Origin: Mytilus edulis | Lineage: Eukaryota | Assembly: GCF_963676685.1 (NCBI RefSeq) | Contig: NC_092350.1 | Location: forward strand, 62,062,001 to 62,126,000 | Length of the DNA stretch: 64,000 nucleotides | Direction: 5' to 3' | Part shown: one piece after another, positions 7,450 through 56,222 of the stretch | Layout: every line of letters begins with the position of its first letter | Position numbering within the stretch: the first letter of the stretch is position 1 | Position numbers and translations under genes: made by a program | Notes under the pieces: model-generated | Seen by the model: the letters and a program-made list of their open reading frames with translations, nothing else | Told to the model about the DNA's origin: nothing | Databases searched by the model: none

Positions 7450-7703
7450 TCATTTCATCAAATAAACTTTGAATTCCTGTACGTCCTGAACCCCGTCACA
7501 CATAACGGTGTAGTTGTTATGCAAACTGCACTGTCCTGTTGCTGTGGAAATCACAAACAGTTTACAGTTGTCAGATATGTAGCAATACCGTGCACATTCA
7601 ACTTTACTTCTTGATGTCAGGACTTGGTTAGACGGTGATGTAAGTATCGTCCTATTTGAGATTAACTGATACTGCAATTTTTCCTCTTTATATGGTAGAT
7701 ATC
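7450..7703 (-). CDS. Copy 1 terminal exon, PAN/apple-like domain
   Basis: tttacag acceptor, phase 1; SKVECARYC...C..F......C.L pattern; lies within ORF 7450..7716. Confidence 0.85.
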
Positions 7704-10700
7704 CTGTAAAAAACATTTACAAAAACAGATTTTATTTAGATTGCTATTTAACGTGTTTGTTTGATAACCATCAATCATAAATCAACTGATATAAATCGAA
7801 AACCTGACAGCCACTTATTGTAATTATAACTATTTCCCATTGAAGATTAAGCTGAATGTGATTATGTAAATAGTAAAAGGCTAAGGTCCAACTTTGAATC
7901 AATACAAAATACTGCAAATATTCTAGTTCAACTTTCACGATAAAATTAATGCAAATCGTACTAAGTATTGATATATTATTTATTTCTGAATAGCAGGACC
8001 CATTCAACTCATTGCTGCCTCTAATTTCGCCCTTCTCTAGAAGTTACTTTGAAACCATTGATGTTGTGTTTGTGCTTTGATTTATATGTTTCCAATGGAT
8101 ATATATGCTTTTCAAAATAGAGGCGAAAGATACAGAAAGTTCATTCAAAACTCATAAGTAAAAAAAAAGTTACAACGACATAGATAGATAAAATATAAAG
8201 ACAACAAACATATAATAGTACACGAAGAGTTCAAATTGGTCCAAATTTTTCGGTGTTTTTGAAATCTTGAAATTATTTACAAATTTCGCATATATATTCT
8301 TGTGATTATACTATCAAGACAAAATAGATATTTTTTGACACCTTCCTTTAAATCTTACGAAGTTATGACCAGTTACATAAGCGTTATTGCATTTAAAGGT
8401 TAATTTTGTTTTAAAAAAAATCCATTATTTTAATTGTCTTTTGGCATAATTAACCATGGCCGCTATCCACGATCCAATGGTTTTTATATTAATGAATTCC
8501 TTTTTAAAATTGGAATCTTTTGGTTACAAACAATTTTGGATCGTAGGTGGCGGCCAAGGATTGCCCAGTGCTTTTACGTCTGAAAATTGCACACAATCTT
8601 TATATTTTGACAAAATGTCCAAAATGAACTTACTTTGGAGAATATTTTGTACTCTTATGAAAAGAACTGATTTATTTCGCATGAAGGCTTTTGCAATAAA
8701 CTCATTTACAAATCAAATTGTGACCTTTTTGATATATTATGATTAAGTTGATATTTTTGGCCATTTTGTGACATATGTGAACCTTGTCCAACATAGAAAA
8801 ACTAAAAACTGTGCAACAGAAACCACAATCAAAATCCCAGATACCCAAAATGTAAGGTTAGAAGTTCATGTTTCACATGTGGCATCTGTCGTCTTGCATT
8901 AAAGTTTGATAAATCGAATGTGTAAGGTTATAATTAACGTTTGCAATCCTTCATATTTCTATCTATTAAACTTGTTGACAAATAAACGGTTTGTAGTAGA
9001 ATTAATGTTAAAGGCATATATTCCATTATATTATTACCAACTGAAATAGAGAAAAAAAAACATTGGAATAAAAAATAACACTTGAATTTGAATCCGACTC
9101 AATATACGAGGACAGAACGTGAACAAAAACAGATACAGAACTTTGATTGAGATATGGATTTTATCTTACCTAGAGTAGCCACATCACAAATGGGTTTTAT
9201 GTTGGTTTTTTTCTGACAATATGGTTTAGAAAGCAATGCTCTTTTAAAAAAAGCTTTGTAAGAAATAAAAACTAACAACGATGATAATTCTATCTAGAAG
9301 CACATCCAAGTTTCATGTACAATTAGATTGTCATTTCTTTCTTTTCTAAAAAGTTATTAACACCAAAAAAAGATTCAATTGGACCAAAACAAAATATTGT
9401 CCTTTTTCTGATAGAACTTACAACATGTGGATTCATTTTTTTTTCGTGGGTACCAATTTTCGTGGATTAAGTGCAACTTACTTGTTCTTGGATATTTATT
9501 TTTGTGGTTTGGTCCAATTCTTCATACAGTCCTATAGAACATTTGTTTACTGTTAAACAGTTAATTGCTTTGTTCAACTATACCAACAAAATTAACTAAA
9601 ATTGGTATCCATCGAATTATAATGAATCGTTTGACCGTGAAATGAGAAATACGAAATATTTAATGATGATTTTCAAAAAAAAAAAAAAAAAAGAAATTAC
9701 ACACGTTGACGATTCAAATCCCTTACCTGTTTTATACACAGACATCCTCCAAAATCCCCCACACATCTGACCAGAATCGCCATAACACTCCATATCACAA
9801 TCATAATCCTGTACGTATTTATCAGGACAGTGTTGATAAGGGTCATCTCCACAATAGCATTCGAAACCATACTAAAAATTATTAACTATGTTAATTCGGT
9901 TAAGGTCAATAGTATGTACATTTGAATTCAACAAGACTGTTCATGACTGACGACGATTTGAACTGTCAAAATATGGTTCCAGATTAGTGTTTACTAGTGA
10001 ACTGGTTACCACATAAATAAAAAAAAATCAATCTTTTGATGGATATATAATTGATATTTTAAGAATCAACTCATCATACCTCTTCAAACCATATTTATTT
10101 ATTCTAACATAAAATCATAAATGTGTCGTGGTGAACAAGTCGGTGCCGCAGCCCACCACTCCATTTATATTCACAAAAATATACAGTTTTTGTTGTATTT
10201 CTCATAATGTTAATTTTATTCAAAAATATAGTTTTATAATCTTTACGTATTCTGATTGAACTCAGAATTAGCTTTGATAATGACTACAATGATATTGATG
10301 GGATGAAGGTGAGTTTGCAATGGTGTTTTTTTTTTGTATTCTATTATCGTCTTTTGCAGATAATATAAGCTACATAGTGTGCTTGTAACCTAATACGGTA
10401 TATATGGGGTCAGTAAATTTCATATTACTGACTCCATATTTACCGTATTACCTCACTAGCACACTGTGTAACGAATTTATCTTACCGACTATCTTAACAT
10501 GTGAAATACAGACTAGTGGCATATCATAATGAGCAAGACTTCGATACTGTTAGTATTAAGAAACTAGCTACTTGTTTTATGAATTTATTCCATCTTAATC
10601 ATCAAATTCTACGTCTGTTGAAACGGCCTTTACGATTTTTTCTCAGTACCTTTTTGCTTTTATAAAGGGAAGAAACACCAATACTAACTGTGTATGAAAT

Positions 10701-13700
10701 AATCCCCGCCTCCCTACTAACCTAATACCAAATAAACACGGTCTCCACCAGGACGCGTTTAACCCGTCATATTCCCAGAAATGTATAGGAGGTAAGATAA
10801 AGCTGAATATCTCCCCATTGACATGCACGTTTACCTCATATTCGTGAAGGGGTTGTTTACTTGATATATCCAACGTGTAAGGTAAAAGTCTGGACACTAA
10901 ATCATCGCTGTATTAAATACCGATACATTCTGGTTCCCCTGTGCCTTTATCAGCGTTACCTCTTTATAAGGTCTCATGTGTTTGAAGAATTTTGTTTATA
11001 TAATTTAGTCAACATGTAACTTGTGTCGTACTTTATCTTCAAAAAGATGACAATAATTTTGTAACAAAAATCAGATTTCATCGAAGTGCCACTTATCTAT
11101 GTGCTAATTGGTTCAATTGTCAGAAGACAAACAATAACCCACGAATGTGCGACGTACTTCACTATACGATGATGTAAACGGGATATTTGCAATACAGTTA
11201 ATAGTTAATATTAATAGACTACTAATAGTTGATATTAACCCACTTTCAAAATGTTATGCTTTAACTCATAAAATGTAAAATCATTTTCGTACATAGACTG
11301 TTGCAAACAAAAAGGAAGAACTAATTTCGGAAGCAACTGTATATAGATGGTTTCATGACAGCGCAAATATAACCTTTGTGGGTTTTTTTTTTTATTTCTG
11401 TTGACATGTGTTTTGAATAATAGTTATCAATGTACCAGGCTTATAATTTCATACGCAAGACGCACGTGTCGTCTACATAAGACTCATTAGTGACGTTCTG
11501 ATCAAAATATTTAAACAGCCTAACAAGTACATAGTTGAAGAGCATTGATGACCCAACATTTCCAAAACGGTTGTGCAAATACGGCTACGGTTATATATGC
11601 CTGGGATAAGAAAATTAGTATTTGGAGTATTTGGAGTACTCTTGCAAACAGAAAATCTATCAAAATGACCATATATTAATTGAACGTAAACATTATTTTT
11701 GTAAGTCTTTCATAATAAAATAAATTTAACTATTTTGTTTGGCATATTGTTAGAAAACTATTTTAATTAAGTGAGAGCCTGGAAATAATAAGTTTCTTCC
11801 GGAATTGAAGTACTTTTCTCAGATGTCTTTTTCCTTCAATCAAAATATTGTCTAATTACGTGTGTAATATGTTAAATTATCTTTGCATTACTACACCAAT
11901 ACCTGTGTTCCAGAGTACATATATCCCTTTTCTTTACAGTAAAGCAAGCACATATTGTTTTCTGTATCTGGATGATATCTGCTCAACAAGTATTGATGTG
12001 GAAACAGTCTTTGAGATACTGTATCAATAAAACATCCAACATACGCATTGTTATCTGTGAAAAAGACATTTAAGTTACTGCATACGTTTAACACGAAGAT
12101 ATTGGTAATTACTGAATGACTAGATACATACATTTACAATGGTTACCTTCCCTTGAGGTTAAATACTGAGGAAACATAATTTACTTAAGGATGTTTACTC
12201 CTTTTTTGTATGCCAGCTTTTCTGAATCCTCTGGTTTTATCCATATACAAATGTAGTACCATTAAAAAGAAATTGCCCACTGACTTTTCTTGTCATAATT
12301 TGATTACATATAGGTTAAAAGGTCTTCTGTGAAAATGTTATCAAATCCTTGTTATTATTTCATCTTTTTAAAAGGTAAAGTGTATGAAAAATCTAGAGAG
12401 AATTGTTTCCCGCCAAATTTTCATAGGCATATACCTTGAAAACAAGCACATCGACCCTATCTTTTTTATGCTTTTTTAGTTTCTTTATTTCCAAACAATC
12501 AATTTATAACAGTCTCTATCAAAGCTTGTTATTTTGAAACAGAGTAGCGAACATCCTTAAGAAGATTAAATGTACTCTAAAATATGAGTATCGAAAATTT
12601 GCATTATATGTACAATACGTTTAATTCTCCCTCCTAGTTCCTAGTGAACTTATCTTGCTGATGATTGCTGGATGAAAGATAACAAATAAAACTAGTATCA
12701 TATATTATCAAAATACGTGAAATATATCAAAAGGAACTCACCAATTACCTGTACTTGACTCTGAAAAATAAACAAAATTAATACTTCTTTATATTTTGTC
12801 TATATTGGATATGCATATGTGAAAATGCTAAGGAAGCTAGTTTTCGTTTAAGACAAGATAACATATAAAGCGAGAACAAGCTAAACCTTACGTAGTAATC
12901 TTAGATACATGGATGTCCAGCTTTATGTTCAGTTCAAAACATGATATACTGGTAATTATTGGAATTGTTCTTCTGAATCAGCATATACATGTATGAGGCC
13001 CCTCATGGGGGGTCCTAGTAATCACATAATCACATAATCATTAAATATTTGCTTATCTTTAGTAATCAAATAATCATAAACTAAAAATACAGTCCTAGGT
13101 AATCAAATAATCATGAAATATTTGGCTTAATAATCAAATAATCATTAAAAAAACGGCCAAGTAATCACATAATCAATAACCCCATGAGGGCCCTCATGTA
13201 TACATGGTATAAATCGTAAACTATACTATTCCTCTCATATCGTACACTCAGTTCTTTGGTTTATCTGTTTGGTGACACTAAAAGGTGATTAGCAATCATT
13301 AATAATAATTATATCGGCAATTATCCTTGTATTACACACATCTTCAAATTGACCGTCCGTATTCAAATTGAAACGTAAGCTTCGCCCAATCAATCTCAAT
13401 ACATATACACAAGAAGAAGAAGATGAAGATAATATATAAAGAACTTAAATTTTTCCAACTGATAGGTACAACAGTTATTATAAACAGATAAATTGAAATG
13501 GGTTACTTGTCGATTAATTGAAAGAAACCGGGGAACGCAACATAGAAAACGCAACTCAAATTTTAAATTCTACGAATTAGGCTTGTGATAACGGACCAGG
13601 TTTATGCCATCAGCATATCTCTTAACTGAAAGGGCATGCGCAGTAGTAGCCGTGTGTATTTAGTAAAGTCAATTCATTTCTAATTGTAGACAAAACACCA

Positions 13701-16700
13701 AAATATCCTACTGTATGGCAGCTGTTTTTTTATTCATTTGACGTGCTTGAATTTTTGTTTTTGCCATTTTACTAAGGACTTTCCAATATGAATTTTCCTC
13801 GGAATTTTGTATTTTTATAATTCTACATTTTATATAATATATTTAATTGTTTATGCATAAACATCTTATTGATTTGGATCACGTTCCTAACGATTCTTTC
13901 AAAAATTACTAAAGCTAGTCTACAAAAAAACAACACCAAAACGATCACGTCAGTCAATGAAGGTTGTTTCAATATCAAATATACAAGGTAAAACCATAAA
14001 GGAAATGTAAATTTCGTTTTACAAATTACAATTCAAGATGAATTTACCAGGTCAGGAATGTGACAGTTGTTATTCATATGTTTTATATGTTTCAGCTTTT
14101 GACTTTTCCATTTGATTACATACTTTCCATTTCGATTTTTCTCGGAGCTCAGAATTTTTGTTATTTTACTTTTTTAGTACGTCTGAAATATTTTTCTGGA
14201 AATATCCTTATTGGAAACGCTCAAAACCCTCAAATCTTAAAGACCAGAACATATGAAATGTCTTCAAAGTTGTTAGTAAGTGGAAAAACATTTAACTGCA
14301 AACAGGAAGTACTGATTTGATATACTGTAAAATTGAGAATGGAAATGGGGAATTTGCCAAAGAGACAACAACCCGACCATAGAAAAAAACAACAGCAGAA
14401 GGTCACCAACAGGTCTTCAATGTAGCGAGAAATTCCCGCACCCGGAGGCGTCCTTCAACTGGCCCCTAAACAAACATATACTAGTTCAGTGATAATGAAC
14501 GCCATACTAATATCCAAATTGTACACAAGAAACTAAAATTAAAATAATACAAGACTAACAAAGGCCAGAGGCTCCTGACTTGGGACAGGCGCAAAAATGC
14601 GGCGGGGTTAAACATGTTTGTGAGATCTCAACCCTCCCCCTATACCTCTAGCCAATGTAGAAAAGTAAACGCATAACAATACGCACATTAAATTTCAGTT
14701 CAAGAGAAGTCCGAGTCTGATATCAGAAGATGTAACCAAAGAAAATAAACAAAATGACAATAATACATAAATAACAACAGACAGGTATACAATTTTTCTT
14801 TCTGGTGACTTCCTCGTGTAGACATGTGTAAAGCGGTTAATAAATAGTACAAGTTAGGCTTAGTTGAATACATATTTTGTATTTGTTGCATACTGTTTTT
14901 CGTTTGATCATCAAATTACAATGAGATAAATCGCTTCAACTATAACAGTTTTCGAAAAAAAATAATCTGATAAACATGATAAAAATACTTTTGATAATAA
15001 AGTTAATCACGCACATTGTCACTTTCTTTTTATTGTTTATGTACAAAAATCTTAGTTCTTTTTTTTAGTATAAGAATCTAGGTCGAAATATTTAACATTA
15101 AATTCATACTGATTAACATCTAACATATGTACAATACAAGTTTTTCCTTATTTCTAGTTCCAACATGTATATACTTGGAATTCTTAAGAGTTTCTTTTAT
15201 TCACAGTTATAAGAATGCATGCGATTGAATGTCTTCTAAAAAAACACTTAAAAATCTTTTTGTCAGACATCTTTTCGAAACTAGAAATAGAAAGGTGAGA
15301 TTTTTTTTCCAAAGATATATCATTGATACCTTTTAGAGAAATGGACTAATTGTGATCGAGATATAAAGCATGGGATGTAAAAGCTACAGAAGAACTTAGT
15401 TTGAAATGGCAATAGGTAGAAAATAACGCATGCATTCTTATAACTGTGATTGAATGTTACTGTTTTGAGTTAATAGTACACACGGCGATAATTATAATAA
15501 TCTAATAAATGATTGGCAAAAATGTATATGCTTGTGATCGTCCTATGTGGCAATCGTAACAACGTATTTTATTTGGTTTTTACACCAGGTATAACTAGCA
15601 ATCAAATTTTCAAACAGTGGTAAATGGAACAGCTGCAGACATTTCATAGATACTATTTACTAGCTTGAATTATTGTGGAGTCCTCGATTATCCCATCTTT
15701 TAAAAAACCCCATTAAAGATGGCAATTACATGTTTCATGTTGTTGTGAGATAATTTATCAAATTTCTATCCAAATAAAGGATATAATAATATATCAGCAT
15801 GTTAAACATTTCAATGACGTGTTCATAACTACTAAATATTGAGATTTGCTGCTTTTCTACTTAACATGATGCATTTTGGACTGAGTGCAACGACCACCAG
15901 TCGGCCTTGATATAATTTTTTCTTGTTGCATATGCCTTCGGACTGTGAAATAGCAGTTAAAAATCAAGCATCATACATCCAGACGTAAATTGAAATAACA
16001 CTTTAAAGATATGTTTAAAAGACACTGTTGAAATGACTGTTGCCCTTTTAAATCTTTTCCTTGAAAAGAGACGTGAAAGAGACGTAAAGAACATTCCTAA
16101 TTTTTTTAATTGATGCTGTGAGTTCTAATTCATGACGTTGATGTTTAATGTAACGTTGCGATTGTAAAGGTTTTGTTCTTCATTTAGGCACCAAACCATT
16201 TAGTTTAAGCATTCATTTGAAAAATAAGGATTTGTTTGTCATTACTTCAAAAATATGTTTTGTAACCTCAACTCCTATTACTGCTTTATAACTGAAATTG
16301 TTTTGGTTTTGTTTTTTTTGCATTTTCTGTGTTAATGTTGTTAAATATTAGGTTAATACACTAAACCATATTTAGCAGAACATCATAGAATAGGGTGATC
16401 GGATATACAGTCATATAAAGAATACAAATATGATAGTTCCTTTGATAATCTTAATAAAAAAGAAAAACATTTGATGTGTTTATGTTCTTTAAAGGGTTCT
16501 ATTAAGAAATGAAGTAAATTGATAAACAAATTGTTTTTTCCTCACCAGTTTAAATTGTGATGTTAAAATTTTGTAAATGGATAAACATAATTAGTTCAAC
16601 GCTATTTGAAAATATTTTATAATCAAATTCGTGTCGATGCATGTTTTATACAGAAATTAATAAATGACCTTTTCCATATCGGCCCGCTTATTATCCCGAC

Positions 16701-18816
16701 ACCCCATATTATCTCCATACGTAGTCGAGGTGCAGATATGGGTCGATGGATGATATCCGGGCCGATATGGAAAAGGCCATGTATTAATTTCTTTGTCATA
16801 TATACTTACGACAAATTTTGCATCCAACATATACACTTTAATTTTTTAACAAAAACATCACTACCTCCATATATTCTTATGGTAACGTAGATCCTGTAGA
16901 TCCTTTAAATCCATGATAAACCAGCATTATTTTAAAAATCTATACCATTGGGTTTAACCATGTTTACATCTGCTTTTCAATAACAGCTGGTACTGTATAG
17001 ACAGATTTACCACTGGATCAAATACACATTAGTTGTCCCAAATTACTGGACATCACAAAATGTTGATGTCATAATAAAAAAAAATCTGACGCCACAAGGA
17101 AAAGTTAACAGACGAAACTGGAAGTACCGGAAGTAACTTGCACGAGAGGCACTGTTATGTTGGTTTTTTTTTTTTTTTGCACGAGAGGCCCCTGATATAG
17201 TTTATAACAAGTATCAGTCTGGGTGTGAAATTATGCCATGTGTACTTCCGTGTGTTACACATATTCAAAAGCTATTATATTGATGCTAAGTATATGATAA
17301 AAAAAAGTGTTATCCTGATTTAGAGTAAATTCTCGAAATTTGATTGGCTGATATTGTTCTTATAAATTTCAGTACAAGTTTTTTGTTCCGTCAATTGGAA
17401 TTATCTCCCTTATTTATTACGTCACCCGATAGGAATTGTATTGACTCGATAAATTCTCGTATTAGGACAATTGCACACTATGTAACTAATATTATAGTAT
17501 GACCAAATACTCAACTATTGACGACAACAAAAACAAGCCATTGAAATGTCTTTATTACTGTGGAAACCTTTATGGGACACATTATATCTGCTTAGCAAAA
17601 TACTCAGAGAAGTTAATTAATTGCAATGAACACTTATTGAAGTGAAAAGAAACGTCCACCATCTAGTAAACCTGTACCTGGTGTTCATGCAGTATATTTA
17701 ACTTTCAATAACTTAAGATAACTTAACGGGTTTATTTACTATTTGTAGAATAAAGACTTGATTTTCTTTCCAGATTAAAGATTTTTAATTATTCACCTAA
17801 TTTAAACAAAACAAGTAATTGGTAAATCAGGGAAACATTGTCTTAAAACTGACGGTAAACAATGTTCCATTGACGTGTTGTCCTAACTAGAAGTTTGGAA
17901 ATTATACACATAAATAATGGCAGCAAATGATCATTTTTCAATGAATGTATGCATGACACTTTTTCAGAATGGAAATGTATGTTCATCACATAAAAATAAA
18001 TAATGTTTATAGCTAATGACACTATAAAATATATAGATACTTAGTAATGAAAATCGCCCCTTTACAAAATTTTAAAAATTATATTGAATGAAGAAATAAA
18101 TCTTCCGCACCTGCACACGCAAAGCTTTGATTCCTTGCAAACACTTTGTTATAATTTTGCTCATATTGATTCCTATTCTCTTTATATTGATCATAATTCT
18201 ATGTTCAGATATGTTTGCCCCCAGTATCTCCGAAAAGAAATGTATTGTCGAAATGTACATTTATTACAGAAAAATTGGTACCGTCAATGTTTCGGCGACA
18301 GTATAAAACACATACTTATGTGTTAAGCAGGAAAACTAATTAACATGGACGAAATGGGAAACATAATGTCGTTTTCATACAACGTTTTTTAATACAATCT
18401 ATATCACTCTTTATTTAGAAATAAAAGATCTACCAATGTTTTGGATTCATTGCAAGTTTACTCAAAGAGATCATTGCTAGCGTATTGTTCAAGTTCGTAA
18501 GGACATTATTAGCAACTCTGTTAAAGTGTTTCTATTTTTTGTGTTCAATTGTGAACTCGTAGTTCAGTATTTTTGTGATTTTATTTTTTGATGACCTAAG
18601 ATGATTCCATAAAATCTTATACGCCGAAACTGTAATTAAATTAAGTTTCAATAAGAAATAAAGAAAACATCACAATATGAAACTAATATGCCTAACTGTC
18701 GGTGTTATGCATTTGTTATTAGATATATTGATAGTTATTAAATATAAATTAGACTAAAATAGTATTACCTTAACTGATTCTATAGAATAAACACACATCA
18801 ACGAGCTCAGCAGCAT
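7450..18816 (-). CDS. Gene copy 1 (spliced): secreted WSC-domain + PAN/apple-like protein, 205 aa
   Basis: Exons 18816-18769, 12760-12742, 12054-11903, 9871-9727, 7703-7450, all GT-AG, join to 618 nt without internal stops: MLLSSLMCVYSIESVK-SQVQVI-DNNAYVGCFIDT...MCLLYCKEKGYMYSGTQ-YGFECYCGDDPY...CDMECYGDSGQMCGGFWRMSVYKT-GYLPYK...SKVECARYCYISDNCKLF...CSLHNNYTVMC...YLMK*. The YxGC..C..C..ECxCG..C..CxG..CGG..SVY pattern is the WSC signature. Confidence 0.85.
9727..9871 (-). CDS. Copy 1 WSC exon 2
   Basis: ttttag|YGFECYCGDDPYQHCPDKYVQDYDCDMECYGDSGQMCGGFWRMSVYKT-G|gtaagg, 145 nt. Confidence 0.9.
10371..10470. repeat. Foldback inverted repeat
   Basis: taatacggtatatatggggtcagtaa / ttactgactccatatttaccgtatta, with outer arms tacatagtgtgct / agcacactgtgta. 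Confidence 0.75.
11420..11690 (-). mobile_element. Non-autonomous repeat carrying a degenerate hammerhead (11454-11495)
   Basis: cgtca-CTAATGA-gtcttatgtagac-GACA-cgtgcg-TC-ttgcg; related copies at 26220-26550 (+), 55990-56040 and 47790-47845. Confidence 0.6.
11903..12054 (-). CDS. Copy 1 WSC exon 1
   Basis: cacag|(D)NNAYVGCFIDTVSQRLFPHQYLLSRYHPDTENNMCLLYCKEKGYMYSGTQ|gtattg, 152 nt. Confidence 0.9.
12189..12556. mobile_element. MITE with TTAA target-site duplication (Kolobok/piggyBac-type)
   Basis: TTAA|ggatgttt...gcgaacatcc|TTAA; sister copies at 25410-25800 and about 43146-43525. Confidence 0.75.
12742..12760 (-). CDS. Copy 1 19-nt micro-exon (SQVQVI)
   Basis: tttttcag|AGTCAAGTACAGGTAATTG|gtgagt; conserved in all three copies and needed for phase. 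Confidence 0.8.
12995..13195. mobile_element. Small MITE with 16-bp TIR and internal TAATCA(C/A)A repeats
   Basis: gaggcccctcatgggg...ccccatgagggccctc flanked by direct ATGTAT. Confidence 0.8.
14327..14782 (+). repeat. Interspersed repeat (aaaattgagaatggaaatgggg...ctggcccctaaac)
   Basis: Diverged copies at about 37073-37310 and 42460-42600. Confidence 0.7.
15202..15448. mobile_element. MITE with perfect 22-bp TIR, CAC- termini and ATT flanks (CACTA/CMC-like)
   Basis: att|cacagttataagaatgcatgcg ... cgcatgcattcttataactgtg|att. Confidence 0.75.
16652..16793. repeat. Foldback palindrome, probable end of a non-autonomous DNA element
   Basis: agaaattaataaatgaccttttccatatcggccc / gggccgatatggaaaaggccatgtattaatttct. 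Confidence 0.8.
18769..18816 (-). CDS. Copy 1 signal-peptide exon, type A (MLLSSLMCVYSIESVK)
   Basis: AAG|gtaata donor; homologous to 56166-56222 including flanks. Confidence 0.7.
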
Positions 18817-29414: not shown

Positions 29415-29471
29415 CTTAATTGAATTCACAATTTCAGCAAATGACAACAAAACAATACAGTTTATAATCAT
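29415..29471 (-). CDS. Orphan or alternative signal-peptide exon, type B (MIINCIVLLSFAEIVNSIK)
   Basis: 57 nt, ATG to AAG|gtaact, phase 0; homologous to the copy 2 first exon 42737-42793, with shared upstream motif ataatcaattttgaatgtgct. Confidence 0.65.
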
Positions 29472-30998: not shown

Positions 30999-31246
30999 TT
31001 ATTTCATCATATAAACTTGGAAATCCTGTGCGAACTGAACTTCCTTACACATAACGGTGAAGCTGTTATACAAACGGCACTCTCTTGTTTCTGTAGAAAT
31101 CACGAATACTTTACAGTTCTCAGCCATTTGGCAATACCGTGCACATTCAATTTTACTTCCACATGTCAGGACTGTGTTGGCCGGCGCCGCAAGTATCGTG
31201 TTATTTGTGACCAGCTTATACTGGCCTTGTTTGTAAGGTACATACC
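30999..31246 (-). CDS. Copy 2 PAN/apple-like terminal exon
   Basis: ttttcag|(G)YVPYKQGQYKLVTNNTILAAPANTVLTCGSKIECARYCQMAENCKVFVISTETRECRLYNSFTVMCKEVQFAQDFQVYMMK*. Confidence 0.88.
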
Positions 31247-40200: not shown

Positions 40201-42793
40201 AGCAACAGTCATCATCGGAGTATCTTGTTAAAAACATGTGTCCGATGACCCGGCCCGCAAAGATAGCCACCATTGACAAAATAAAACATAGGGGTCAAAT
40301 GTAGATTTTCGCTTATATCTGGGACAATATACCTAATGCGCCTCTGATTGAGGAACAGAAAAGTTGTTTGTAAACAAAAACACTGTGTAGTGATATTGGA
40401 CATGTTTAAATTTTTAACAAGTGATTGAGCTTAACTTTTTGTGTTGATCTGGAAAGTATTGGACCTCAGAATAAATGTGTAAAAACTATGGAGTTATTAC
40501 ATGTATTCAAAGTATTAAATTTTCAAAGAAATTATTGTTTGAAAAAAGGGAGGCATGCTAATTTACAGAAAAATAAATCACACTTCGTACCCCGAAAATT
40601 TAACCAAATATGTGAAAATGTCTCAGCTTCGAAACAAGTCATCATACGTTTACAAGTTTACCATATGGGCTGAGCTACAGAAGAAAACGTTACCATTACC
40701 GCCTTTGGAGAAACAATTACGCATATTGCCCCATCTCAGAAACCAAAGCATTTTCAAATATGCCATAGGAAACATTTTGCATCAGCCAAGATCTGTCTAT
40801 CTTGCATTTTTCAAATGAATCATACGACCCTTGTGTTAGAGTTACACATTACGACATTAGTGAAGCACTGTCAGTAAAAAGCTGTGATGAATAAAAAATT
40901 AATGGAACTGAAGTCAAAGCGTCAGTGTGTAGTTGTAGAGGTTGACTCCTCAAAAAAGATCATGACAAGTTACTATATTAAGGGAATTAACCGACTGTTT
41001 ATGATATGAACAAATATTTTTAAAATAAAATTATATCTTTTAAAATGACAGATGATAAATAAAAATTCTAAAACCAGCATTTATGTCACTACACAAATTT
41101 TTTGATATCTTTTTAATATTTTATGAAATAAATTCATTATGGGTACAACACATAATTTGCAGAACAGGATGTAACCTTCTGGCCCACTGTGAAAAGTCGA
41201 AAGATTTCAATTTATTGGCATAGAAGGAATAAGCACATTAACCTAACCCACAACAATTCAAATATTGCTAATGGAGTATTTTAGTGATAAAATATTTTTC
41301 ATGTGTCATTTGATAAGTTACGGGGTTCGTGTAGTTTATTCTTTAGTTTTCTATGTTTTTTATGTGTACTATAGTTTGTCTGTTTGTCATTTTCGTCTTA
41401 AGCCATGGCGTTCTCAGTTTATTGTCGATTTATCAGTTTGACGGTGCCTCTGGTATCTTACGTCCCTCTTTTATATCTTATATATTCAATGTTTATTTTA
41501 TGTTTTAAAAAAGATTTGCGTGTTTGCTAATCCTGTAGTCATATATGGGTTATTGACATGGTTAAAATTCATATTGTTAGTGTAAGGGTTACTAATAATG
41601 TCAAATCAATGATATTTGGTATATAGTTAATTTATAATATCCTTTGTAAAAATATGCCGAGCATATTCAGTATGTATTCGTTTGTATTGTTGTGGAAATC
41701 ATTATTGGATACAATTTGTCTGTTCAACAATATAATCGTTGAAATTTTATCATTTACAATGAATAATCAATGAAATTGGAGGGAAACGTCGACCTACTAG
41801 TAGACCATTTCCACATCTGCAGGATGCATACTTAACTTTCAGTAAATTAGGAGAAATTGAACATACTTTTTATAGAGTAAACACATGTTTTTTTTCTATC
41901 TTTAAGATAGATAGGGTGTCTTCCTCCATCTTGGATTTTGAAGTACCAGAAAACAAGGTCTAATCCTTTAATAGAATGCGCAAATTTTGAGAGTACTATG
42001 TAATTCATGTGTAAGAATTTTCCTTTCGATATAGAAAATGACAGGTTTCATCATATTTATGGTTATATTTCACAAAAAAACTGAAAACTTTTGTTTGATT
42101 AAAAAAAATTATTCAAACTTTGCCACATAAGGGGAGACAACTCAAATACAAGAGCAGATAATTCAGATTTAGGTACTTTTACAATAAATAGAATGTGTTA
42201 GGAATTTACCTATTTTATAATGAAGCAAGAAAACTTATCCGGTGACCCCATTTTTTTCATTTTCTTAACTGAAGGCATACTATTAAAGCTACCTTCTCAA
42301 ATGTTATCTCAAAATTATATGGTGTAGTTTACGCTTTATAGCAGAAAATTGGGTTTTCCATGCATAATCTATACAAAACCTGTCAATTTAGAACACCGCG
42401 TATAAAAAAGATCATCAGGTATATGCCTTTGTTCAATTAATAAAATGACACTGTTTTCACGATGAATCAAGAAACAACAACACGACCAAAGAGCAACAGA
42501 AAGCCACTAATTGGTCTTTAACGCAGCGACAAAATCCTGTACACGAAGGCAAGCTTCAGCTGGCCCCAAAACAGACATGTGGACACGCATACCACGCCAT
42601 GCGATTCCAATCTCAATATCTTATAAAACAAAACTATCATACAATATCTTTTACATGAACAAATTGTTGTGTTTTAAAGCAAAGATTAGTATTATAATAA
42701 TGTATATCGATGTATCGATGTTAAGTAAAGAGTTACCTTAATTGAATTCGCAATTTTCGACACAATCAACAACACAAAATATTGTATAATCAT
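30999..42793 (-). CDS. Gene copy 2 (spliced): secreted WSC + PAN/apple-like protein, 209 aa
   Basis: Exons 42793-42737, 38228-38210, 37839-37691, 32925-32769, 31246-30999; 630 nt open frame: MIIQYFVLLIVSKIANSIK-CQVQVI-DDNDYVGCFIDSFTRLL...FCLLYCKEQGYIYSGTE-NRAECHCGDDPY...CNRECVGDSEQICGGGWRLSVYET-GYVPYKQ...SKIECARYCQMAENCKVF...YMMK*. Confidence 0.88.
31528..31737 (+). repeat. Tandem duplication of about 105 bp in the copy 2 last intron
   Basis: attaatgtgtgcgatataagc...gaagtaaaaac occurs twice, near identical. Confidence 0.9.
32250..32695 (+). mobile_element. 5'-truncated Penelope-like RT fragment plus tail repeat
   Basis: Translates RKLLNQEFKMVKLKSFLRKFYGRNHELVDRYG, then the common tail repeat. 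Confidence 0.65.
32769..32925 (-). CDS. Copy 2 WSC exon 2
   Basis: ttgtag|NRAECHCGDDPYQYGPEDVSDYHIKDYDCNRECVGDSEQICGGGWRLSVYET-G|gtatgt, 157 nt. Confidence 0.9.
35645..36912 (+). mobile_element. Decayed Tc1/mariner transposon, internally deleted
   Basis: TA|cacatggaaaaaagtattgcaacacc ... ggtgttgcaatatttttttccatgtg|TA; transposase remnant WPDYSPDF/NHIEHIW...EWLRLPQ...RLV...AVIRLNGGY (WP..SPDLNPIE..W motif). Confidence 0.9.
37691..37839 (-). CDS. Copy 2 WSC exon 1
   Basis: gaacag|(D)DNDYVGCFIDSFTRLLTHQYVLDNETPDMENNFCLLYCKEQGYIYSGTE|gtaatg, 149 nt. Confidence 0.9.
38210..38228 (-). CDS. Copy 2 19-nt micro-exon (CQVQVI)
   Basis: ttttcag|TGTCAAGTACAGGTGATTG|gtgagt. Confidence 0.8.
40093..40330 (+). 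mobile_element. Helentron-associated (HINE-like) element fragment
   Basis: tagctcacctggctcaaagggccaagtgagct subterminal hairpin, typical of this class. Confidence 0.5.
42737..42793 (-). CDS. Copy 2 signal-peptide exon, type B (MIIQYFVLLIVSKIANSIK)
   Basis: ATG...AAG|gtaact, hydrophobic core, phase 0. Confidence 0.75.
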
Positions 42794-46471: not shown

Positions 46472-46502
<31 letters not shown>

Positions 46503-50203: not shown

Positions 50204-50312
50204 TAGCTTGTTGGAAATTGACACATGGCTAACGCTCAGGATAAAATTCGAATATCACGGCCCAGGCCATGTGTAAATTTCCAAAAATCTGTGGCTTCCA
50301 TGAATTATTTCT
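50204..50312. repeat. Foldback palindrome
   Basis: Arms including ggaaattgacacatggc / gccatgtgtaaatttcc, extended by gaaataattcatggaagcca (about 50184) / tggcttccatgaattatttc. Confidence 0.7.
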
Positions 50313-50956: not shown

Positions 50957-51125
50957 TTATTTCATCATATAAACCTGGAATCCCTGTACGATTTGAACTC
51001 CTTCACACATAACGGTGTGGCTATTATACAAACTGCACTCTTTTGTTTCTGTGGAAATTACGAATACTTTACAGTTGTCAGAAATTTTGCAATACTGTGC
51101 ACAATCAATTTTACTTCTTGATGCA
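50957..51125 (-). pseudogene. Orphaned 3' half of a PAN exon
   Basis: Open frame ASRSKIDCAQYCKISDNCKVFVISTETKECSLYNSHTVMCEGVQIVQGFQVYMMK* fused directly to intron-homologous sequence; no phase-1 compatible acceptor found. Confidence 0.8.
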
Positions 51126-51534
51126 AAGATCATCTTTTAGCTGAAGTGATGAAAAGATTAAATTTGGAATACATGCAACCAGTTCAATGTACATTCTTTT
51201 GCTGAATATCAGAAAACACGCACCTATTTGACACCTCCAATCTCGTTCTTTTTTGATAAATTTGATCCATCCGTGTTGTATGTTGTGCTTTGGTTTGTGG
51301 GTTATTGATGTTGGATATTATTCCGTTATCTATATGTCTGACTAGGCGAACATAAACAAAATGAAGTAACAAAAATGTTATGTGCATTATCCAATTTTAT
51401 GATAATCAACTAAAAGGAGGCACAATTAAGGAATCAAAATGTAACACTACAATATGAATCTGACCTTAACAATATAAAGACGGAACATCAAAGACAACAG
51501 ACTCAGAGCTTCGATTAACAAATAGATTTGTTCC

Positions 51535-51654
51535 CATACTGTGCACATTAACTTACACTTATTGATGGTAGGACTTGGTTTCCCGTTGCTGTAACGTTCG
51601 TGTTATTTTAGACTAACTTATACTAAACCCAACTTTGCTTATAAGGTAAATAGC
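51535..51654 (-). pseudogene. 5' half of copy 3 PAN exon with three in-frame stops
   Basis: ttgcag|(G)YLPYKQSWV*YKLV*NNTNVTATGNQVLPSISVS*CAQY. Confidence 0.8.
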
Positions 51655-54600
51655 CTGCAAATACGTTTAAAAAAATAATAAAACAAAGGCAAAGTTATAT
51701 ACATTTCAAATGCAACAGGAATCACTAAAACTTTTACAATTTTCAATAAAAAAAAAAGAATGCAAAGAAGCACTTTCAGCTTCAGTTGTAAAAGGAAGAT
51801 TTTTTTTAATATATGCAATCATTTAAATATATATGTTTTTTCCTGATTAACAGGACACAATCAACTAGTTGACGCTTCCAATCTCGTTCTTATTTAGTAA
51901 ATTTGAAACTATCAGTGTTGATTTTGTGCTTTGACTTGTGTGCTCTAAATGAATGTATGCGATTTCAGCATTAGTAAACGTTTCGTGTTTCTATTTCACA
52001 GAATTTATTCGGATACTATTTATTTTTACAATTATTTCTGTATCTATTTTCCGAACTTGGTAAAACATAATCGATATGAAGTAAAACAATGCTTTAGTAT
52101 TATCCAATTATACGATAATTATCCGAAATTGGGCAAAATATAGAAATCAAAATGTAACACTAAAATATAAATCTGACCGCAATATATAAAGACATAACAG
52201 AAAATAAAACAAACACAGAGCTTTGATTGGAATAGAGATTTGTTTTTACGTTAAGAGACCGTATCACAAGAGATTTATGAAGATAAGTTAATAAAGGAAT
52301 TAAGAACTATTTCATAATGATTTGATCGATTGATTGATTTTTGTTTGCTTTGATTTGGTGAAATGGAGGCAATCAACAGTGGAAACTTCCGAGGTAATGT
52401 AACATTGGATCGTCACTTTTCTTCATTTCTAAAAAGTTTTCAATACCAATAAATGATTCAATTCTGTAAATTTTAAAGTGTTTATATCCCAGTGGATTTT
52501 CATTCATTCTGGAAAGGAATTTATTTTATACATTTAGAAAAATATTGCTAATAAATTCAATAACACTTTTTTCAGTTTCACCGTGATATTATGAAAAAAA
52601 GAATATTTACTGAGGTTTCACACTATCATTATCATGTTATTCTTACAACCTTTTCTTAAAATGTCTTTTCACGATTCAGTCTTATTACCTGTTTTATATA
52701 CTGATATTCTCCATCCTCCCCCACATATCTGTTCAGAATCGACAAGACACTCACAATCACAATCATAACCCGGTTTTTTGAAATAATCGGGTACATTTTC
52801 AGGGCCGTACCAATAAGGGTCATCACCACACCAACATTCCATACAATTCTAAAATAATTAAATCTGTATTGTAGATTCAGGTCAACAGTATGGATGTCTA
52901 AATCTAATAATAGCGCTTATGATAACGACGATTGGGACTGTTAACTTAATGTGGATTTATGTTAATGACAACTGTAAACCTAATGTATTGGGCTCTTTGT
53001 TTAAGAGCCTAGGTGGTCTAGTGGTCTAGCGCGTCGGACATAGTGCAATGCGATTTGGTGTCACGATGTCTCAGTAGCATGACTTCAAATCCTGGCGAGG
53101 GAAGTTCTTGCCTGGCCGGGATTCGAACTCATGCTACTGAAATACAATGGCACCAAATCGCATTGCACTATGCCTGACGCGCTAGACAACCGGACCACCT
53201 AGACTCTTAAATAATAAAGATTTAGGTAGCTGAATGTTACCTTTCCCTGTCAGTTTTTATTTAACGTCGTACATGATGTATAAGGCATGGAGATGGACTT
53301 CTTACAGATCAGCTGAATTATCTATCGTAGAGAATTTTACAAACTTATGTAGGATACAGTCACAGAAAAAAAAATCTTATTCTAAGTACGTCTCAACCAG
53401 TGACAACTCTACAACAGATTTTTTCCATCAGATCAACATTGATGGTGATACAAGGCTGAAACACACATTCTGTATATATAATTCGTCTAAATATTAGCGC
53501 AACAATGTTAAATCTGTATTTTTTTTGTTCTTCCTTGACCAGGATTCGAACTCATGTTACTGATATATCGTGGTACCAAATCGTTGCACTATGCCCGACG
53601 CGCTAGATCACCTAGGCTCTACAATGATAAATTTTTAGATGGCCGGGTGTAACCTTTCCTCGTCAGTTTTTTTTTTACCTAGCTTCGTACAGTACATTAT
53701 TGTCTTTGGAGGATAAAGTGTTTAATATATCCTTGGATTATTACAACAATACCTGCGTTCCGGAGTACATGAAACCCTGTTCTTTACAGTGAAGCAAACA
53801 CATGTTGTTTTCCATATCTGGTGGATGACTTCCGTTATTCAACAAATATTTATAAGGAAACAGTCTTGTGTATGTATCAATGAAACATCCAACGTAATCA
53901 TTGCTACCTGTTCAACAGACAATTCAATACCTATTAGAAGTTAACACGGACATATTGGCAAAGACAAAACACAACGTAAGTGTTACATACGTAGTGTAAT
54001 ACTTTTCAAACATGTAATTTACTGTCCATGTAATTGAGAAAGACTCATTTATTTTGAGCAATGCACATTTGAAATCGGCTAAAAGTAACAAAAATGTTAA
54101 CAATATAAGAAGTTGAAGACCCCCATAATTTCTGTATTGTCGTGAATAATATCTTGCCGTTGAAAAAAGACGATGTTGTTTTATGAAATTTGATAAAATC
54201 GAGAGAAAAATAGAAATAAACAGGTATCATATTGGATCAATATATATGAAATATTAAAAAAAAAGAACTTACCAATAACTTGTACCTGACACTAAAAAAT
54301 AAACAGTTACAATACAAAACTTAATACTTTTACAATTACGTTTTTCATCGAATAAACTTGAGAATTAATGTTTAGGAAGCTTAAGACGTGTAAAACAAGA
54401 AAGGAATACATACAAAGCCAAAAACATGCAAAGCCTTATGACGTTATCTTAAATACATTGATGACCAGCCTTATTTTCAGTTCAATAATATGATTCAGTG
54501 ACTTTTATTTCAAGTAAAATGCAATCATACTTATAACAAAAGGAACGGTTAATATCAGGTTGGTATTTTTTCCTTATATGACACTTCTTCAGCCACTGTA

Positions 54601-56222
54601 TCGTCGTCATGGTTTTAATTCATATGAATGGACCTAAACGAACACGCCAAGTCTCTTACTATGTTATTATATTATCATGCTGATATGGATCACAGTCCGT
54701 ACAATTCATGCCAAATAAATACATTAAAACTACTGTGCCGCAAAACAGTCAATGAAGGCTGTTCGAAACGATCAAAACCCCAACATTTTAAGGAGCAGAA
54801 ATTATGAAAAAAAACATTTACTTACTTTAAAGATGTAAGAAATCGATAAAGATTAAACTTCCACATGTTCAACGATAGAAAATAATCTAATATATTGTTA
54901 AACAGTATTTCATTCTTTTTTTGTAACTCTTTGTTTAGAAAGGTAAATTAATATGGAAAGTAATGTTTAGTTGGAAACAAGTTTTGTATTTTTTTTTTAA
55001 ATGATGTTTCTGTATTTAACCGTCAAATTATAATGAGATAAATCACATATATTATACTGTCGTGTAATCAATTAAGTATCATTACATAAACGATACCAAC
55101 TGTTCTGCACCAGATACGCATTCCGACAATCAATGTATATTCAGTGATGCTCGGGACCAGAATATAAATTTTAAAGCTTATTCAAAAGGTGATTGCTACA
55201 ACTCAAAAAAGACATAAAGGTACAGCGAACAAGGAATTAGAGCTTTGCATGGAGATACATTCCTGAATTTAAAATAATTTACAATTTTGGTAACAGCAAT
55301 TTCAAAACACAAAATTCGTATGTTCATGCCAGTATCGAATTCTTGACAATAAGGCTGTTAATACCTTCGGGGACTATTAGTCAACCAGTATAGGCATATA
55401 ACCAGTAGCTATAAGAACATACAACACTTTTGTCATCAGGAAAATTTCTCAAGAATTTTAACGTTTCATAGTAGACATAAATACTATCAAAATAATATAT
55501 TTAGATTGTGTCTATACTGGAGTGTTTGTGCATTTTGTCCCAATGAGTTAAATCAGCAACCTGGTAAACATTGTTTTAGACCAGTTCATTAAACATCAAT
55601 TCTTTTAAGCAGTGTCTACAGCTGTGATATTTCTTAAATATACATGTACTATAGAGGATGTTCACTTGTTTTGTTTTTGACTTATTGATATTCCAAATCC
55701 ACTGATTTTATCTATGTAGTGTCATAAAAAAACGGTTACCCTACTCTACTTTTCATAATGTTATTCAATGTAAATAAAAAATGTCATTGTTTAAAGTCTC
55801 ATGAAATCCTAACTATATTTTCATAGTTTCTGAAATCTAGATACACTTATATAATGCCAAATTCCAAATGACCTTTATTTCAAAAACATGGACACCGATA
55901 TTTGTTAATCTTCATTAAAATACTTTATTTTGTGTTTTTAAACCTAATATTGAACACACTAGGTCTTATAGGATGCAACTATAATATCATAAAAGTTATC
56001 AAAGGTACCAGGATTATAATTTAGTACGCCAGACGCGCATAAATTGTCAATGAGAAATAGATAAATTCTTCAAATATGCAAAATAATTAGCGTTACAGTC
56101 GGTGCTAAGCTCTCAAAACTGAATATAATAATAAGTATACACTAAATAGACTAACATAATATTACTTTCAATGATTCTGCAGAGTAAACACACATCAACA
56201 ACCAAAACAGTTGCATAGCCAT
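51623..56222 (-). CDS. Gene copy 3 (spliced): WSC-only truncated protein, 140 aa, or a young pseudogene
   Basis: Exons 56222-56166, 54291-54273, 53907-53753, 52848-52689, 51654-51623 (TAG); the first four exons are open with intact splice sites. Confidence 0.65.
52689..52848 (-). CDS. Copy 3 WSC exon 2
   Basis: ttttag|NCMECWCGDDPYWYGPENVPDYFKKPGYDCDCECLVDSEQICGGGWRISVYKT-G|gtaata, 160 nt. Confidence 0.85.
53000..53211. repeat. Inverted pair of tRNA-derived (Pol III A/B box) elements
   Basis: tttaagagcctaggtggtctagtggtctagcgcgtc...(B-box-like ttcaaatcc) / ggattcgaac...gacgcgctagacaaccggaccacctagactcttaaa; third copy at about 53525-53695. Confidence 0.75.
53753..53907 (-). CDS. Copy 3 WSC exon 1
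   Basis: gaacag|(G)SNDYVGCFIDTYTRLFPYKYLLNNGSHPPDMENNMCLLHCKEQGFMYSGTQ|gtattg, 155 nt. Confidence 0.85.
54273..54291 (-). CDS. Copy 3 19-nt micro-exon (CQVQVI)
   Basis: tttttag|TGTCAGGTACAAGTTATTG|gtaagt. Confidence 0.8.
55107..55152 (-). ncRNA. Degenerate hammerhead relic in a repeat
   Basis: gcatca-CTGAATA-tacattgattgtc-GGAA-tgcgta-TC-tggtgc; stem I pairing kept, core mutated. Confidence 0.45.
56166..56222 (-). CDS. Copy 3 signal-peptide exon, type A (MAMQLFWLLMCVYSAESLK)
   Basis: ATG...AAA|gtaat; homologous to 18769-18816. Confidence 0.75.

What the first reader, a model, noticed from the sequence alone, without database searches (positions are those of the whole stretch)
7450..56222. 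Hidden tandem family of small secreted WSC + PAN/apple proteins
Seen: three paralogues with identical 5-exon architecture and intron phases, two of them fully open (205 and 209 aa), with no transmembrane segment. Known: WSC is a Cys-rich putative carbohydrate (glucan) binding module, and PAN/apple modules bind proteins or glycans. Inference: this is a compact two-domain secreted lectin-like family expanding by tandem duplication, plausibly for pattern recognition or for mucus/shell matrix. I do not recognise it as a named, characterised gene.
Basis: partly seen in the sequence, partly recalled or inferred. Interest (0 to 1): 0.8.

Follow-up and report, generated by a model that had tools for sequence, protein, structure and literature searches.

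The report
Mussel secreted WSC plus PAN family
The window holds three tandem copies of a mussel-only family of small, probably secreted proteins built from two sugar- or protein-binding modules; the genes are real and partly annotated under misleading enzyme names, but nobody has studied them.

Summary
Three head-to-tail copies lie on the minus strand. Each has five exons: a leader, a 19-nt microexon, a WSC domain split over two exons, and a PAN/apple exon. All introns are GT-AG, with phases 0,1,0,1. Copies A (205 aa) and B (209 aa) are open. Copy C has a rearranged last exon.

Pfam gives the two WSC halves on exons 3 and 4, and PAN_1 above its cut-off on exon 5.

The family is not really hidden. 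Copy B's exons tile Mytilus edulis RefSeq XP_071123672.1 residue for residue. That protein is named "sialate:O-sulfotransferase 2-like", which is a misnomer.

The family is also far larger than three. There are 35 strong exon-5 matches in this genome, 25 of them in a 1.1-Mb cluster. Of 35 loci examined, 23 are intact. Median dN/dS is 0.42.

Two-domain relatives were found only in four Mytilus species. No paper in the library describes the family.

RNA support here is thin. One spliced contig joins A's exons 3 and 4, and two raw RNA runs have no reads on A's exons.

Best reading: a secreted lectin-like binder. The function is inferred. This scan also noted the family elsewhere in the genome (s1-836217).

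The parts
18769..18816 (-). Copy A, exon 1: leader of copy C's type, 16 aa, followed by a GT donor. An out-of-frame ATG lies 20 nt upstream and opens a 6-codon upstream ORF.
29415..29471 (-). Fourth leader exon, of copy B's type, 19 aa, with a GTAACT donor. It lies between B's stop codon and A, and may be an alternative first exon of A. Its use is untested.
14124..14130 (-). ATGGAAA followed by GT. It matches the start (MEK) of the public model P0033, which was built on A's near-identical twin. That start would give a product without a leader.
12742..12760 (-). Copy A, exon 2: 19-nt microexon (SQVQVI). It lacks the Cys that 20 of 23 copies have here.
11903..12054 (-). Copy A, exon 3: first half of the WSC domain (Pfam profile 1-45), 3 Cys.
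   Evidence: joint 9871->11903
9727..9871 (-). Copy A, exon 4: second half of the WSC domain (profile 46-82), with the CGG motif. It has 6 Cys, one more than usual.
7450..7703 (-). Copy A, exon 5: PAN/apple module and stop codon, 5 Cys, NRT sequon.
42737..42793 (-). Copy B, exon 1: 19-aa leader.
41862..41885 (-). Decayed relic of a leader of copy C's type, inside B's intron 1.
38210..38228 (-). Copy B, exon 2: 19-nt microexon (CQVQVI).
37691..37839 (-). Copy B, exon 3: first half of the WSC domain.
32769..32925 (-). Copy B, exon 4: second half of the WSC domain.
30999..31246 (-). Copy B, exon 5: PAN/apple module and stop codon, 6 Cys, NNT sequon.
56166..56222 (-). Copy C, exon 1: 19-aa leader.
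54273..54291 (-). Copy C, exon 2: 19-nt microexon (CQVQVI).
53753..53907 (-). Copy C, exon 3: first half of the WSC domain.
52689..52848 (-). Copy C, exon 4: second half of the WSC domain. The Pfam match is weaker (14.8 bits) and there are 7 Cys.
51536..51661 (-). Copy C: decayed 5' half of the PAN exon, with three in-frame stops.
50957..51130 (-). Copy C: open 3' remnant of the PAN exon, with no acceptor in the right phase. The twin locus L038 has the same break.

Best explanation
The window holds three tandem members of a multigene family seen only in Mytilus. It is most likely Mytilus edulis, chromosome-scale contig C7. Each gene encodes a protein of about 205-211 aa made of four parts:
- a cleavable leader, of which two unrelated leader-exon types exist;
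- a short segment from a 19-nt microexon, which usually carries one Cys;
- a WSC domain with 8 Cys and the CGG motif, split by a phase-0 intron;
- a PAN/apple domain.

Both modules belong to the PAN/apple fold class. The typical mature protein has 14 Cys.

Shown: the gene structures, the domain identities, the family size, coding constraint, and restriction of the two-domain form to Mytilus in the databases searched.

Inferred: the product enters the secretory pathway and acts outside the cell as a soluble, disulfide-rich binder of glycans or proteins (lectin-like). Many diverged paralogues would offer different binding surfaces, most plausibly at mucosal surfaces or in haemolymph.

Copy B is the sound copy. 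Copy A is open but has an atypical leader and uncertain use of its last exon. Copy C has lost a usable PAN exon and could at most give a WSC-only product.
For: - Gene models with canonical splice sites and equal phases.
- Pfam on single exons: WSC profile 1-45 on exon 3 and 46-82 on exon 4, with E about 1e-5 in A and B; PAN_1 scores 27.3, 24.7 and 23.2 bits against a cut-off of 21.4 on exon 5.
- On the public protein P0015, WSC scores 55.4 bits against 27.8. B's five exons tile P0015 residues 1-209, with both split codons matching.
- A profile of the family matches the Kremen1 WSC domain at E 2e-10.
- The AlphaFold model of P0015 has pLDDT 86-92 over the PAN part. The top structural neighbours are PAN/apple domains: SML-2 lectin Z 10.3, TgMIC4-A5 Z 10.1, plasminogen Z 9.9, HGF Z 9.1.
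- Leaders have hydrophobic cores, there is no membrane segment, and exon 5 has a conserved N-x-T sequon.
- Family size: 44 exon-5 and 47 exon-3 matches in the genome.
- All 35 loci examined keep the exon 4 - exon 5 order, and 23 of the 35 are intact.
- Median pairwise dN/dS is 0.42 over 250 pairs, and none exceeds 1.
- Leader exons occur only within the family's own clusters: 11 of B's type and 22 of C's type.
- One contig in run X1 joins 9871 to 11903 with CT..AC ends and no mismatches, which is A's exon 3/4 junction.
Against: - No binding, secretion or tissue data were seen here.
- No signal-peptide predictor was available, so the leader call is heuristic.
- RNA: two raw-read RNA runs (X13, X16) gave zero depth on A's exons. 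No exon 2/3 or exon 4/5 joint was seen. The one spliced contig runs on into intron 4, and a low-depth piece crosses exon 5's acceptor unspliced.
- The public model on A's twin (P0033) skips the PAN exon and has no leader.
- PAN_1 on full-length P0015 is just under the cut-off (21.1 against 21.4).
- The WSC part of the fold model has low confidence.
- WSC domains do not always bind sugars. PMC13094651 (passages) reports no polysaccharide binding for the oxidase constructs tested, each of which carries one WSC domain. In Kremen1 the WSC domain contacts a protein (PMC5014086, passages).
Confidence: 0.6

Rival explanations
1. A matrix or adhesive partner rather than an immune lectin. The PAN module would bind collagen or another structural protein of byssus, shell matrix or mucus, and the WSC module a polysaccharide.
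For: Structural neighbours of the PAN part include the leech anti-platelet protein (Z 8.0) and saratin (Z 5.1); that these two bind collagen is my recall. A preprint on oyster mantle lists a "WSC domain-containing protein 2" among up-regulated secreted-protein genes (10.1101/2023.01.19.524809, passages).
Against: The best neighbours are sugar-binding apple lectins, plasminogen and HGF. No tissue data were seen here. Dozens of diverged paralogues fit recognition better than a fixed structural partner, though that is an inference.
Confidence: 0.2
2. Mostly decaying duplicates. On this view the array is a graveyard of recent copies, the open frames are short-lived, and the public models are pipeline products.
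For: - 8 of 35 loci have clear defects, copy C among them.
- A's leader is atypical.
- Public models include chimeras (P0033, P0040).
- Two RNA runs are silent on A.
- dN/dS is 0.6-2 in copy C's subgroup, on few sites.
Against: - 23 of 35 loci keep three open exons and exact splice sites.
- All 8 WSC cysteines are kept in all 23, and the 5 conserved PAN cysteines in 22 of 23; L023 has lost one.
- Median dN/dS is 0.42, with none of 250 pairs above 1, at a median dS of 0.47.
- A's exons 4 and 5 are identical in a model from another species (P0044).
Confidence: 0.1
3. Enzymes or receptors, as the RefSeq names say: sialate O-sulfotransferase, xylosyltransferase, Kremen.
For: Only the names given by sources. 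They stem from the shared WSC domain.
Against: Pfam finds nothing but WSC and PAN in six family proteins. The 209 residues are filled by leader, WSC and PAN, which leaves no room for a catalytic, Kringle, CUB or membrane part.
Confidence: 0.02
4. Exons of a larger gene that the five-exon models cut short.
For: Some public models fuse neighbouring copies (P0033 at 220 aa, P0040 at 456 aa).
Against: The fusions only repeat the same unit. B's RefSeq model starts at the leader ATG and ends at the stop codon of exon 5. Each copy carries its own leader and stop.
Confidence: 0.03

Closest known systems
WSC domain (PF01822), as solved in human Kremen1 and yeast Wsc1
   Same: It has the eight cysteines and the CGG motif, and a Pfam score of 55.4 bits on P0015. 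The family profile matches the Kremen1 WSC domain at E 2e-10. The WSC fold is itself of the PAN/apple kind (PMC5014086 and PMC9024836, passages).
   Different: There is no Kringle, CUB or membrane span as in Kremen, and no Ser/Thr-rich stalk, membrane span or tail as in Wsc1 (that make-up is recalled). Here the domain sits in a protein of about 190 mature residues, next to a canonical PAN module.
PAN/apple lectins of apicomplexan parasites (Sarcocystis SML-2, Toxoplasma MIC4 apple 5)
   Same: These are the best structural neighbours of the C-terminal module: Z 10.3 (rmsd 2.3, 72 aligned) and Z 10.1 (rmsd 1.8, 67 aligned). Their PDB entry titles call SML-2 a lectin and show complexes with lacto-N-biose (TgMIC4-A5) and a thio-galactose (SML-2).
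   Different: Sequence identity is only 15-16%. The sugar-binding residues were not compared. Those proteins are built of apple domains alone.
N-terminal PAN domains of plasminogen and HGF, and apple domains of factor XI and prekallikrein
   Same: Same fold (Z 8.6-9.9). Same core pattern of four cysteines (C-x3-C ... C ... C; the pattern in those proteins is recalled).
   Different: Those are modules of large multi-domain proteins, mostly with protease domains, that bind proteins or heparin. The mussel module has a fifth cysteine in 22 of the 23 intact copies.
Fungal secreted WSC proteins and copper-radical oxidases with WSC or PAN modules
   Same: WSC matches by sequence to 9n3u (E 2.4e-9) and 7pz2. 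One fungal hit carries both WSC and PAN_4 (P0088).
   Different: The fungal proteins are longer (434-661 aa), have several WSC repeats or a catalytic module, and match only the WSC half of the mussel profile (45-66% coverage in named non-Mytilus hits).
WSCD1/WSCD2 sialate O-sulfotransferases (the source of the RefSeq names)
   Same: Only the WSC domain.
   Different: No sulfotransferase domain was found, and the protein is about 209 aa. The name misleads.

Membership tests
WSC domain (PF01822) | Profile match above Pfam's gathering score | tested here: met
   P0015, which equals copy B's product, scores 55.4 bits against 27.8. On single exons the two halves of the profile (1-45 and 46-82) match exon 3 and exon 4 at 22.9-26.1 bits each in A and B. 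Each half alone is below the cut-off.
WSC domain (PF01822) | Eight conserved cysteines and the CGG motif | tested here: met
   There are 3 Cys in exon 3 and at least 5 in exon 4 in all 23 intact copies. CGG follows the last of them in 22 of the 23; L015 reads CEG. The feature itself is as stated in PMC9024836 (passages).
WSC domain (PF01822) | PAN-like fold wrapped by a long L5 loop | tested here: inconclusive
   The AlphaFold models have pLDDT 21-68 over the WSC part. The order of helix and strands is compatible, but confidence is too low.
PAN/apple (PF00024 PAN_1) | Profile match above the gathering score | tested here: met
   Exon 5 alone scores 27.3 (A), 24.7 (B) and 23.2 (C remnant) against 21.4. 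In full-length P0015 the score is 21.1, just under. Only 4 of the 119 hits carry a precomputed PF00024.
PAN/apple (PF00024 PAN_1) | Apple fold: a five-stranded sheet cradling one helix, with two core disulfides | tested here: met
   pLDDT is 86-92 over residues 141-190. The nine matches with Z of 8 or more are all PAN/apple domains, and so, by my reading of the entry titles, are nearly all of the 25 with Z of 5 or more. The Foldseek list is likewise PAN/apple throughout. The C-x3-C...C...C pattern is nearly invariant.
Secreted protein | Cleavable N-terminal signal peptide, and no membrane anchor | tested here: inconclusive
   Leaders have 9-residue hydrophobic windows of KD 2.26-2.91. Exons 3-5 have no stretch above 0.94. 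No SignalP was on hand. A's leader is only 16 aa.
WSCD1/2 sialate O-sulfotransferase | Sulfotransferase catalytic domain | tested here: not met
   Pfam lists only WSC and PAN_1 in the six family proteins scanned.
Kremen | Kringle-WSC-CUB triplet with a membrane anchor | tested here: not met
   There is no Kringle or CUB match and no hydrophobic span. The defining triplet is from PMC5014086 (passages).
Xylosyltransferase oxt | Glycosyltransferase catalytic domain (recalled: GT14) | tested here: not met
   P0001 clusters with P0021, the protein so named. Pfam finds only WSC and PAN_1 in P0001.
Sugar-binding apple lectins (SML-2, MIC4) | Conserved galactose-binding residues | not tested
   Only the fold was compared.

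The most novel reading that the evidence does not exclude
A genus-specific, rapidly diversifying repertoire of secreted double-apple-fold lectins that mussels use as soluble recognition molecules. The variable WSC loops would give different specificities. A disulfide from the microexon cysteine to the fifth PAN cysteine would clasp the two modules. Two interchangeable leader/promoter exons would let one gene be switched between tissues.
Probability: 0.25. Interest if true: 0.55.

Novelty: new variant of a known kind. Interest (0 to 1): 0.4.

Why it matters
Mussels are known for large, lineage-specific families of secreted recognition and defence proteins, and for gene presence/absence variation. 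That background is my recall.

A family of 35 or more loci that pairs two PAN-fold modules and is seen only in Mytilus would add a new architecture to that repertoire.

It is also a concrete case of automatic names (sulfotransferase, xylosyltransferase, Kremen) hiding what a family is. Correcting those names would help anyone who reads mussel transcriptomes.

One 2015 study lists a "WSC domain-containing protein 2" among the top gill-specific transcripts (PMC4581086, passage). Whether that transcript belongs to this family is unverified.

Tried and rejected
- **Broad literature searches.** mostly returned unrelated papers. In one search the minimum number of terms was met by common words alone, so it says nothing.
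- **Narrow literature searches.** "WSC domain" + Mytilus found 2 papers. "WSC domain-containing protein" + mussel found 2. WSC + PAN + lectin + Mytilus found 1, on C-type lectins. None describes this family. Supplements were closed, so I could not see the contig behind the gill transcript of PMC4581086.
- **First fold model.** With 21 rows the mean pLDDT was 43. A second model with 28 rows reached 59.7, good only in the PAN part. I could not read cysteine distances from it, so the proposed clasp disulfide is untested.
- **ESM Atlas.** All scores were under 0.9, and the nearest clusters were WSC clusters of rotifers and cnidarians. These are leads only.
- **Exon search by DNA similarity.** DNA similarity alone misplaced exon 1, since blocks at 14222-14279 and elsewhere proved intronic. 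The leaders were found by peptide and local alignment.
- **Rejected exon models.** For A I rejected a 12-nt version of exon 2 paired with a 19-nt first coding piece. For B I rejected a 20-nt first exon at 41885, which gives the wrong phase.
- **RNA.** Runs X13 and X16 (raw reads, about 6% and 18% of each run read) gave nothing on A's exons. X3 gave only repeats.
- **Copy C's constraint.** dN/dS on C's WSC exons has too few sites to decide.
- Where a whole protein was needed I used public proteins by id. Selection counts were summed exon by exon.


Full report
**What is there.** The window is AT-rich (GC 0.29-0.37). tblastn of the two open exon-like ORFs against the window found three minus-strand copies of a WSC-like exon and of a PAN-like exon. 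blastn between the three regions showed short conserved blocks, 77-83% identical across the WSC and PAN exons, in otherwise mostly unalignable DNA. Reading those blocks in three frames and checking splice signals gave five-exon models:
- A: 18816..18769, 12760..12742, 12054..11903, 9871..9727, 7703..7450 (205 aa).
- B: 42793..42737, 38228..38210, 37839..37691, 32925..32769, 31246..30999 (209 aa).
- C: 56222..56166, 54291..54273, 53907..53753, 52848..52689, then a broken last exon.

All introns are GT..AG, and the phases are 0,1,0,1 in each copy. In C the 5' half of the last exon (51661..51536) has three stops. The open 3' remnant (51130..50957) has no acceptor in the needed phase. A partial duplication of intron 4 and the exon's start explains the layout.

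**Leaders.** Two unrelated leader exons exist. B uses one type (19 aa). C uses the other (19 aa). A has a shortened C-type leader of 16 aa, preceded by an out-of-frame ATG. A further B-type leader lies at 29471..29415, between B's end and A. B's intron 1 keeps a decayed C-type relic near 41885. In the whole genome the B-type leader has 11 matches and the C-type 22, all within the family's clusters. Both types are spliced to the microexon in public models: P0015 for the B type, and an internal part of P0040 for the C type.

**Domains.** On single exons, Pfam places WSC profile positions 1-45 on exon 3 and 46-82 on exon 4 (E 1e-5 to 1e-4; weaker, 0.033, for C's exon 4). PAN_1 is above its cut-off on exon 5. 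The family has the eight WSC cysteines and the CGG motif that PMC9024836 describes (passages). The PAN core has four cysteines plus a fifth one that 22 of the 23 intact copies keep. The microexon codes CQVQVI-like peptides, and 20 of the 23 microexons found start with Cys. The usual total is 14 cysteines. In A's group the microexon Cys is lost and an extra Cys appears elsewhere. B's group has 15.

**Not hidden, and which organism.** A search of 1.84 billion representative proteins with A's exon 5 gave only 14 hits. By their cluster records, the close ones are Mytilus proteins. All five exons of B are exact substrings of P0015 (XP_071123672.1, Mytilus edulis, "sialate:O-sulfotransferase 2-like"). 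They tile its residues 1-209, with both split codons agreeing. Contig C7 of the window's genome has 93,447,462 bases, the same length as the contig recorded for that protein. The window is therefore most likely the M. edulis RefSeq assembly.

A's exons 3 and 4 are exact in P0033. That is a chimeric M. edulis model which starts MEK, lacks a leader and a PAN exon, and runs on into the next copy. A's exons 4 and 5 are exact in P0044, a 149-aa M. galloprovincialis model that starts inside exon 3. No retrieved protein holds C's exons or A's leaders.

Where a whole protein was needed I used these public proteins by id.

**Family size.** In the genome (1.37 Gb) exon 5 has 44 matches and exon 3 has 47. 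Of the exon-5 matches, 35 have E of 1.2e-17 or better, and 25 of those 35 lie in C7:61.68-62.75 Mb. The others lie at C7 55.2 and 68.6 Mb and on C2, C5, C6 and C9. Weaker pairs on C12 and C14 mark a distant subfamily.

I fetched 32 loci and added the three window copies. All 35 have exon 4 and exon 5 in the same order and strand. Their state is as follows:
- 23 of 35 have exons 3-5 open, with splice sites at the homologous places.
- 8 have defects: L018, L033, L035, L036, L037, L038, L040 and copy C.
- For 4 (L041-L044) the fetched stretch did not reach exon 3.

A, B and C each have a near-identical twin 72-176 kb away (dS 0.009-0.02). C's twin shows the same broken exon.

**Constraint.** Counts were summed exon by exon over the 23 intact copies. 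Over the 250 of 253 pairs with dS between 0.03 and 1.5, the medians are dN 0.199, dS 0.474 and dN/dS 0.42, and no pair exceeds 1. The copies are thus under coding constraint, but a loose one. Variation is highest at the start of exon 4 and in two stretches of exon 3. In C's subgroup dN/dS is 0.6-2 on few sites.

**Range.** With P0015 as query, 17 of 42 candidates passed, and all 17 are Mytilus. With the family profile, 119 of 1038 candidates passed. The 23 hits that cover 72% or more of the query are all from M. edulis, M. galloprovincialis, M. coruscus or M. trossulus. Named hits from other organisms cover 45-66%, which is the WSC part only. One unnamed metagenome protein reaches 71%. The sources call the mussel proteins WSC domain-containing, sulfotransferase-like, xylosyltransferase-like, kremen-like or uncharacterized. 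Only 4 of the 119 carry a precomputed PAN family.

**Fold.** The second model of P0015 is confident in the PAN part (pLDDT 86-92) and weak in the WSC part. The structural neighbours of the C-terminal module are PAN/apple domains throughout, led by two apicomplexan sugar-binding lectins. By sequence, the family profile matches the Kremen1 WSC domain (E 2e-10) and fungal WSC modules. The WSC fold is itself PAN-like (PMC5014086 and PMC9024836, passages), so the protein is in effect two apple-type modules in a row.

**RNA.** No indexed holder of the A stretch is on record as RNA. I laid 7300-13000 on four runs.
- X1 (assembled contigs; that it is RNA is only a guess) has one contig of depth 17.1 and no mismatches. 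It joins 9871 to 11903 with CT..AC ends, which is exactly A's exon 3/4 junction.
- That contig continues into intron 4.
- Another X1 piece (depth 4) crosses exon 5's acceptor unspliced, and some intronic pieces have depth 6-12.
- X3 held only repeats.
- The raw RNA runs X13 and X16 had zero depth on A's exons.
- No exon 2/3 or 4/5 joint was seen.
- A's twin is 99-100% identical, so the contig may come from either copy.

The refuting condition "no junction reads" is therefore not met. Support remains thin, and A's last-exon use is open.

**How it most likely works.** Shown: an array of constrained genes for small proteins with leaders, two disulfide-rich modules, a conserved glycosylation sequon and no anchor. 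Inferred: secretion, and binding of extracellular glycans or proteins, with paralogue diversity giving different specificities. The rivals are a matrix or collagen partner, a decaying array, mis-named enzymes, and parts of a larger gene. They are weighed in their own sections. Caution is due because WSC domains bind a protein in Kremen1, and the fungal oxidase constructs tested, each with one WSC domain, bound no polysaccharide (PMC5014086 and PMC13094651, passages).

**Verdict.** This is a real family, seen only in Mytilus, much larger than noted, annotated under misleading names and uncharacterised. It is a new arrangement of known modules rather than a new kind of thing, and its interest is moderate.

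**Limits.**
- There was no signal-peptide predictor.
- There was one read-laying run.
- Supplements were closed.
- The census is a lower bound.

Noticed in passing
G000 C7:61.93-62.03 Mb versus window (L013, L034, L038, L018): Near-identical twins of A, B and C, and of the copy just before A, lie 72-176 kb upstream. dS is 0.009-0.02 and C's twin has the same broken PAN exon. This is either a very recent block duplication or uncollapsed haplotypes in the assembly.
   Followed up: partly
window 60233-63216: About four tandem copies of a unit of roughly 740 bases, mostly 91-99% alike.
   Followed up: partly
window 56940-57259: Tandem repeat of a 103-base unit, 3.1 copies, 88% matches.
   Followed up: no
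window 36386-36592 (+): An open frame inside B's intron 3 whose translation looks to me like the C-terminal part of a Tc1/mariner transposase. The resemblance is recalled and was not tested.
   Followed up: no
window 19436-19798 (-), 32485-32763 (+), 47254-47592 (+): Three open frames share a hydrophobic peptide motif. This is a dispersed repeat in and between the family's genes.
   Followed up: no
window 9401-9591, 10356-10546, 12457-12647: Very high RNA and contig depth, 95-99% alike, with loose ends on both sides in all four runs. These are transcribed repeats inside A's introns, not exons.
   Followed up: partly
window 14222-14279, 39575-39641, 54762-54809: A short block in intron 1 is conserved in all three copies. 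In A it sits just upstream of the ATGGAAA|GT that a public model uses as its start. It may be an internal promoter or exon, or a shared repeat.
   Followed up: partly
G000 C12:49.96-50.07 Mb and C14:32.42-32.61 Mb: Clusters of weaker WSC-exon and PAN-exon pairs (24-34% identity on the PAN exon). They probably belong to the distant subfamily of P0045 and P0047, which keeps a CQIQVL segment after its leader.
   Followed up: no
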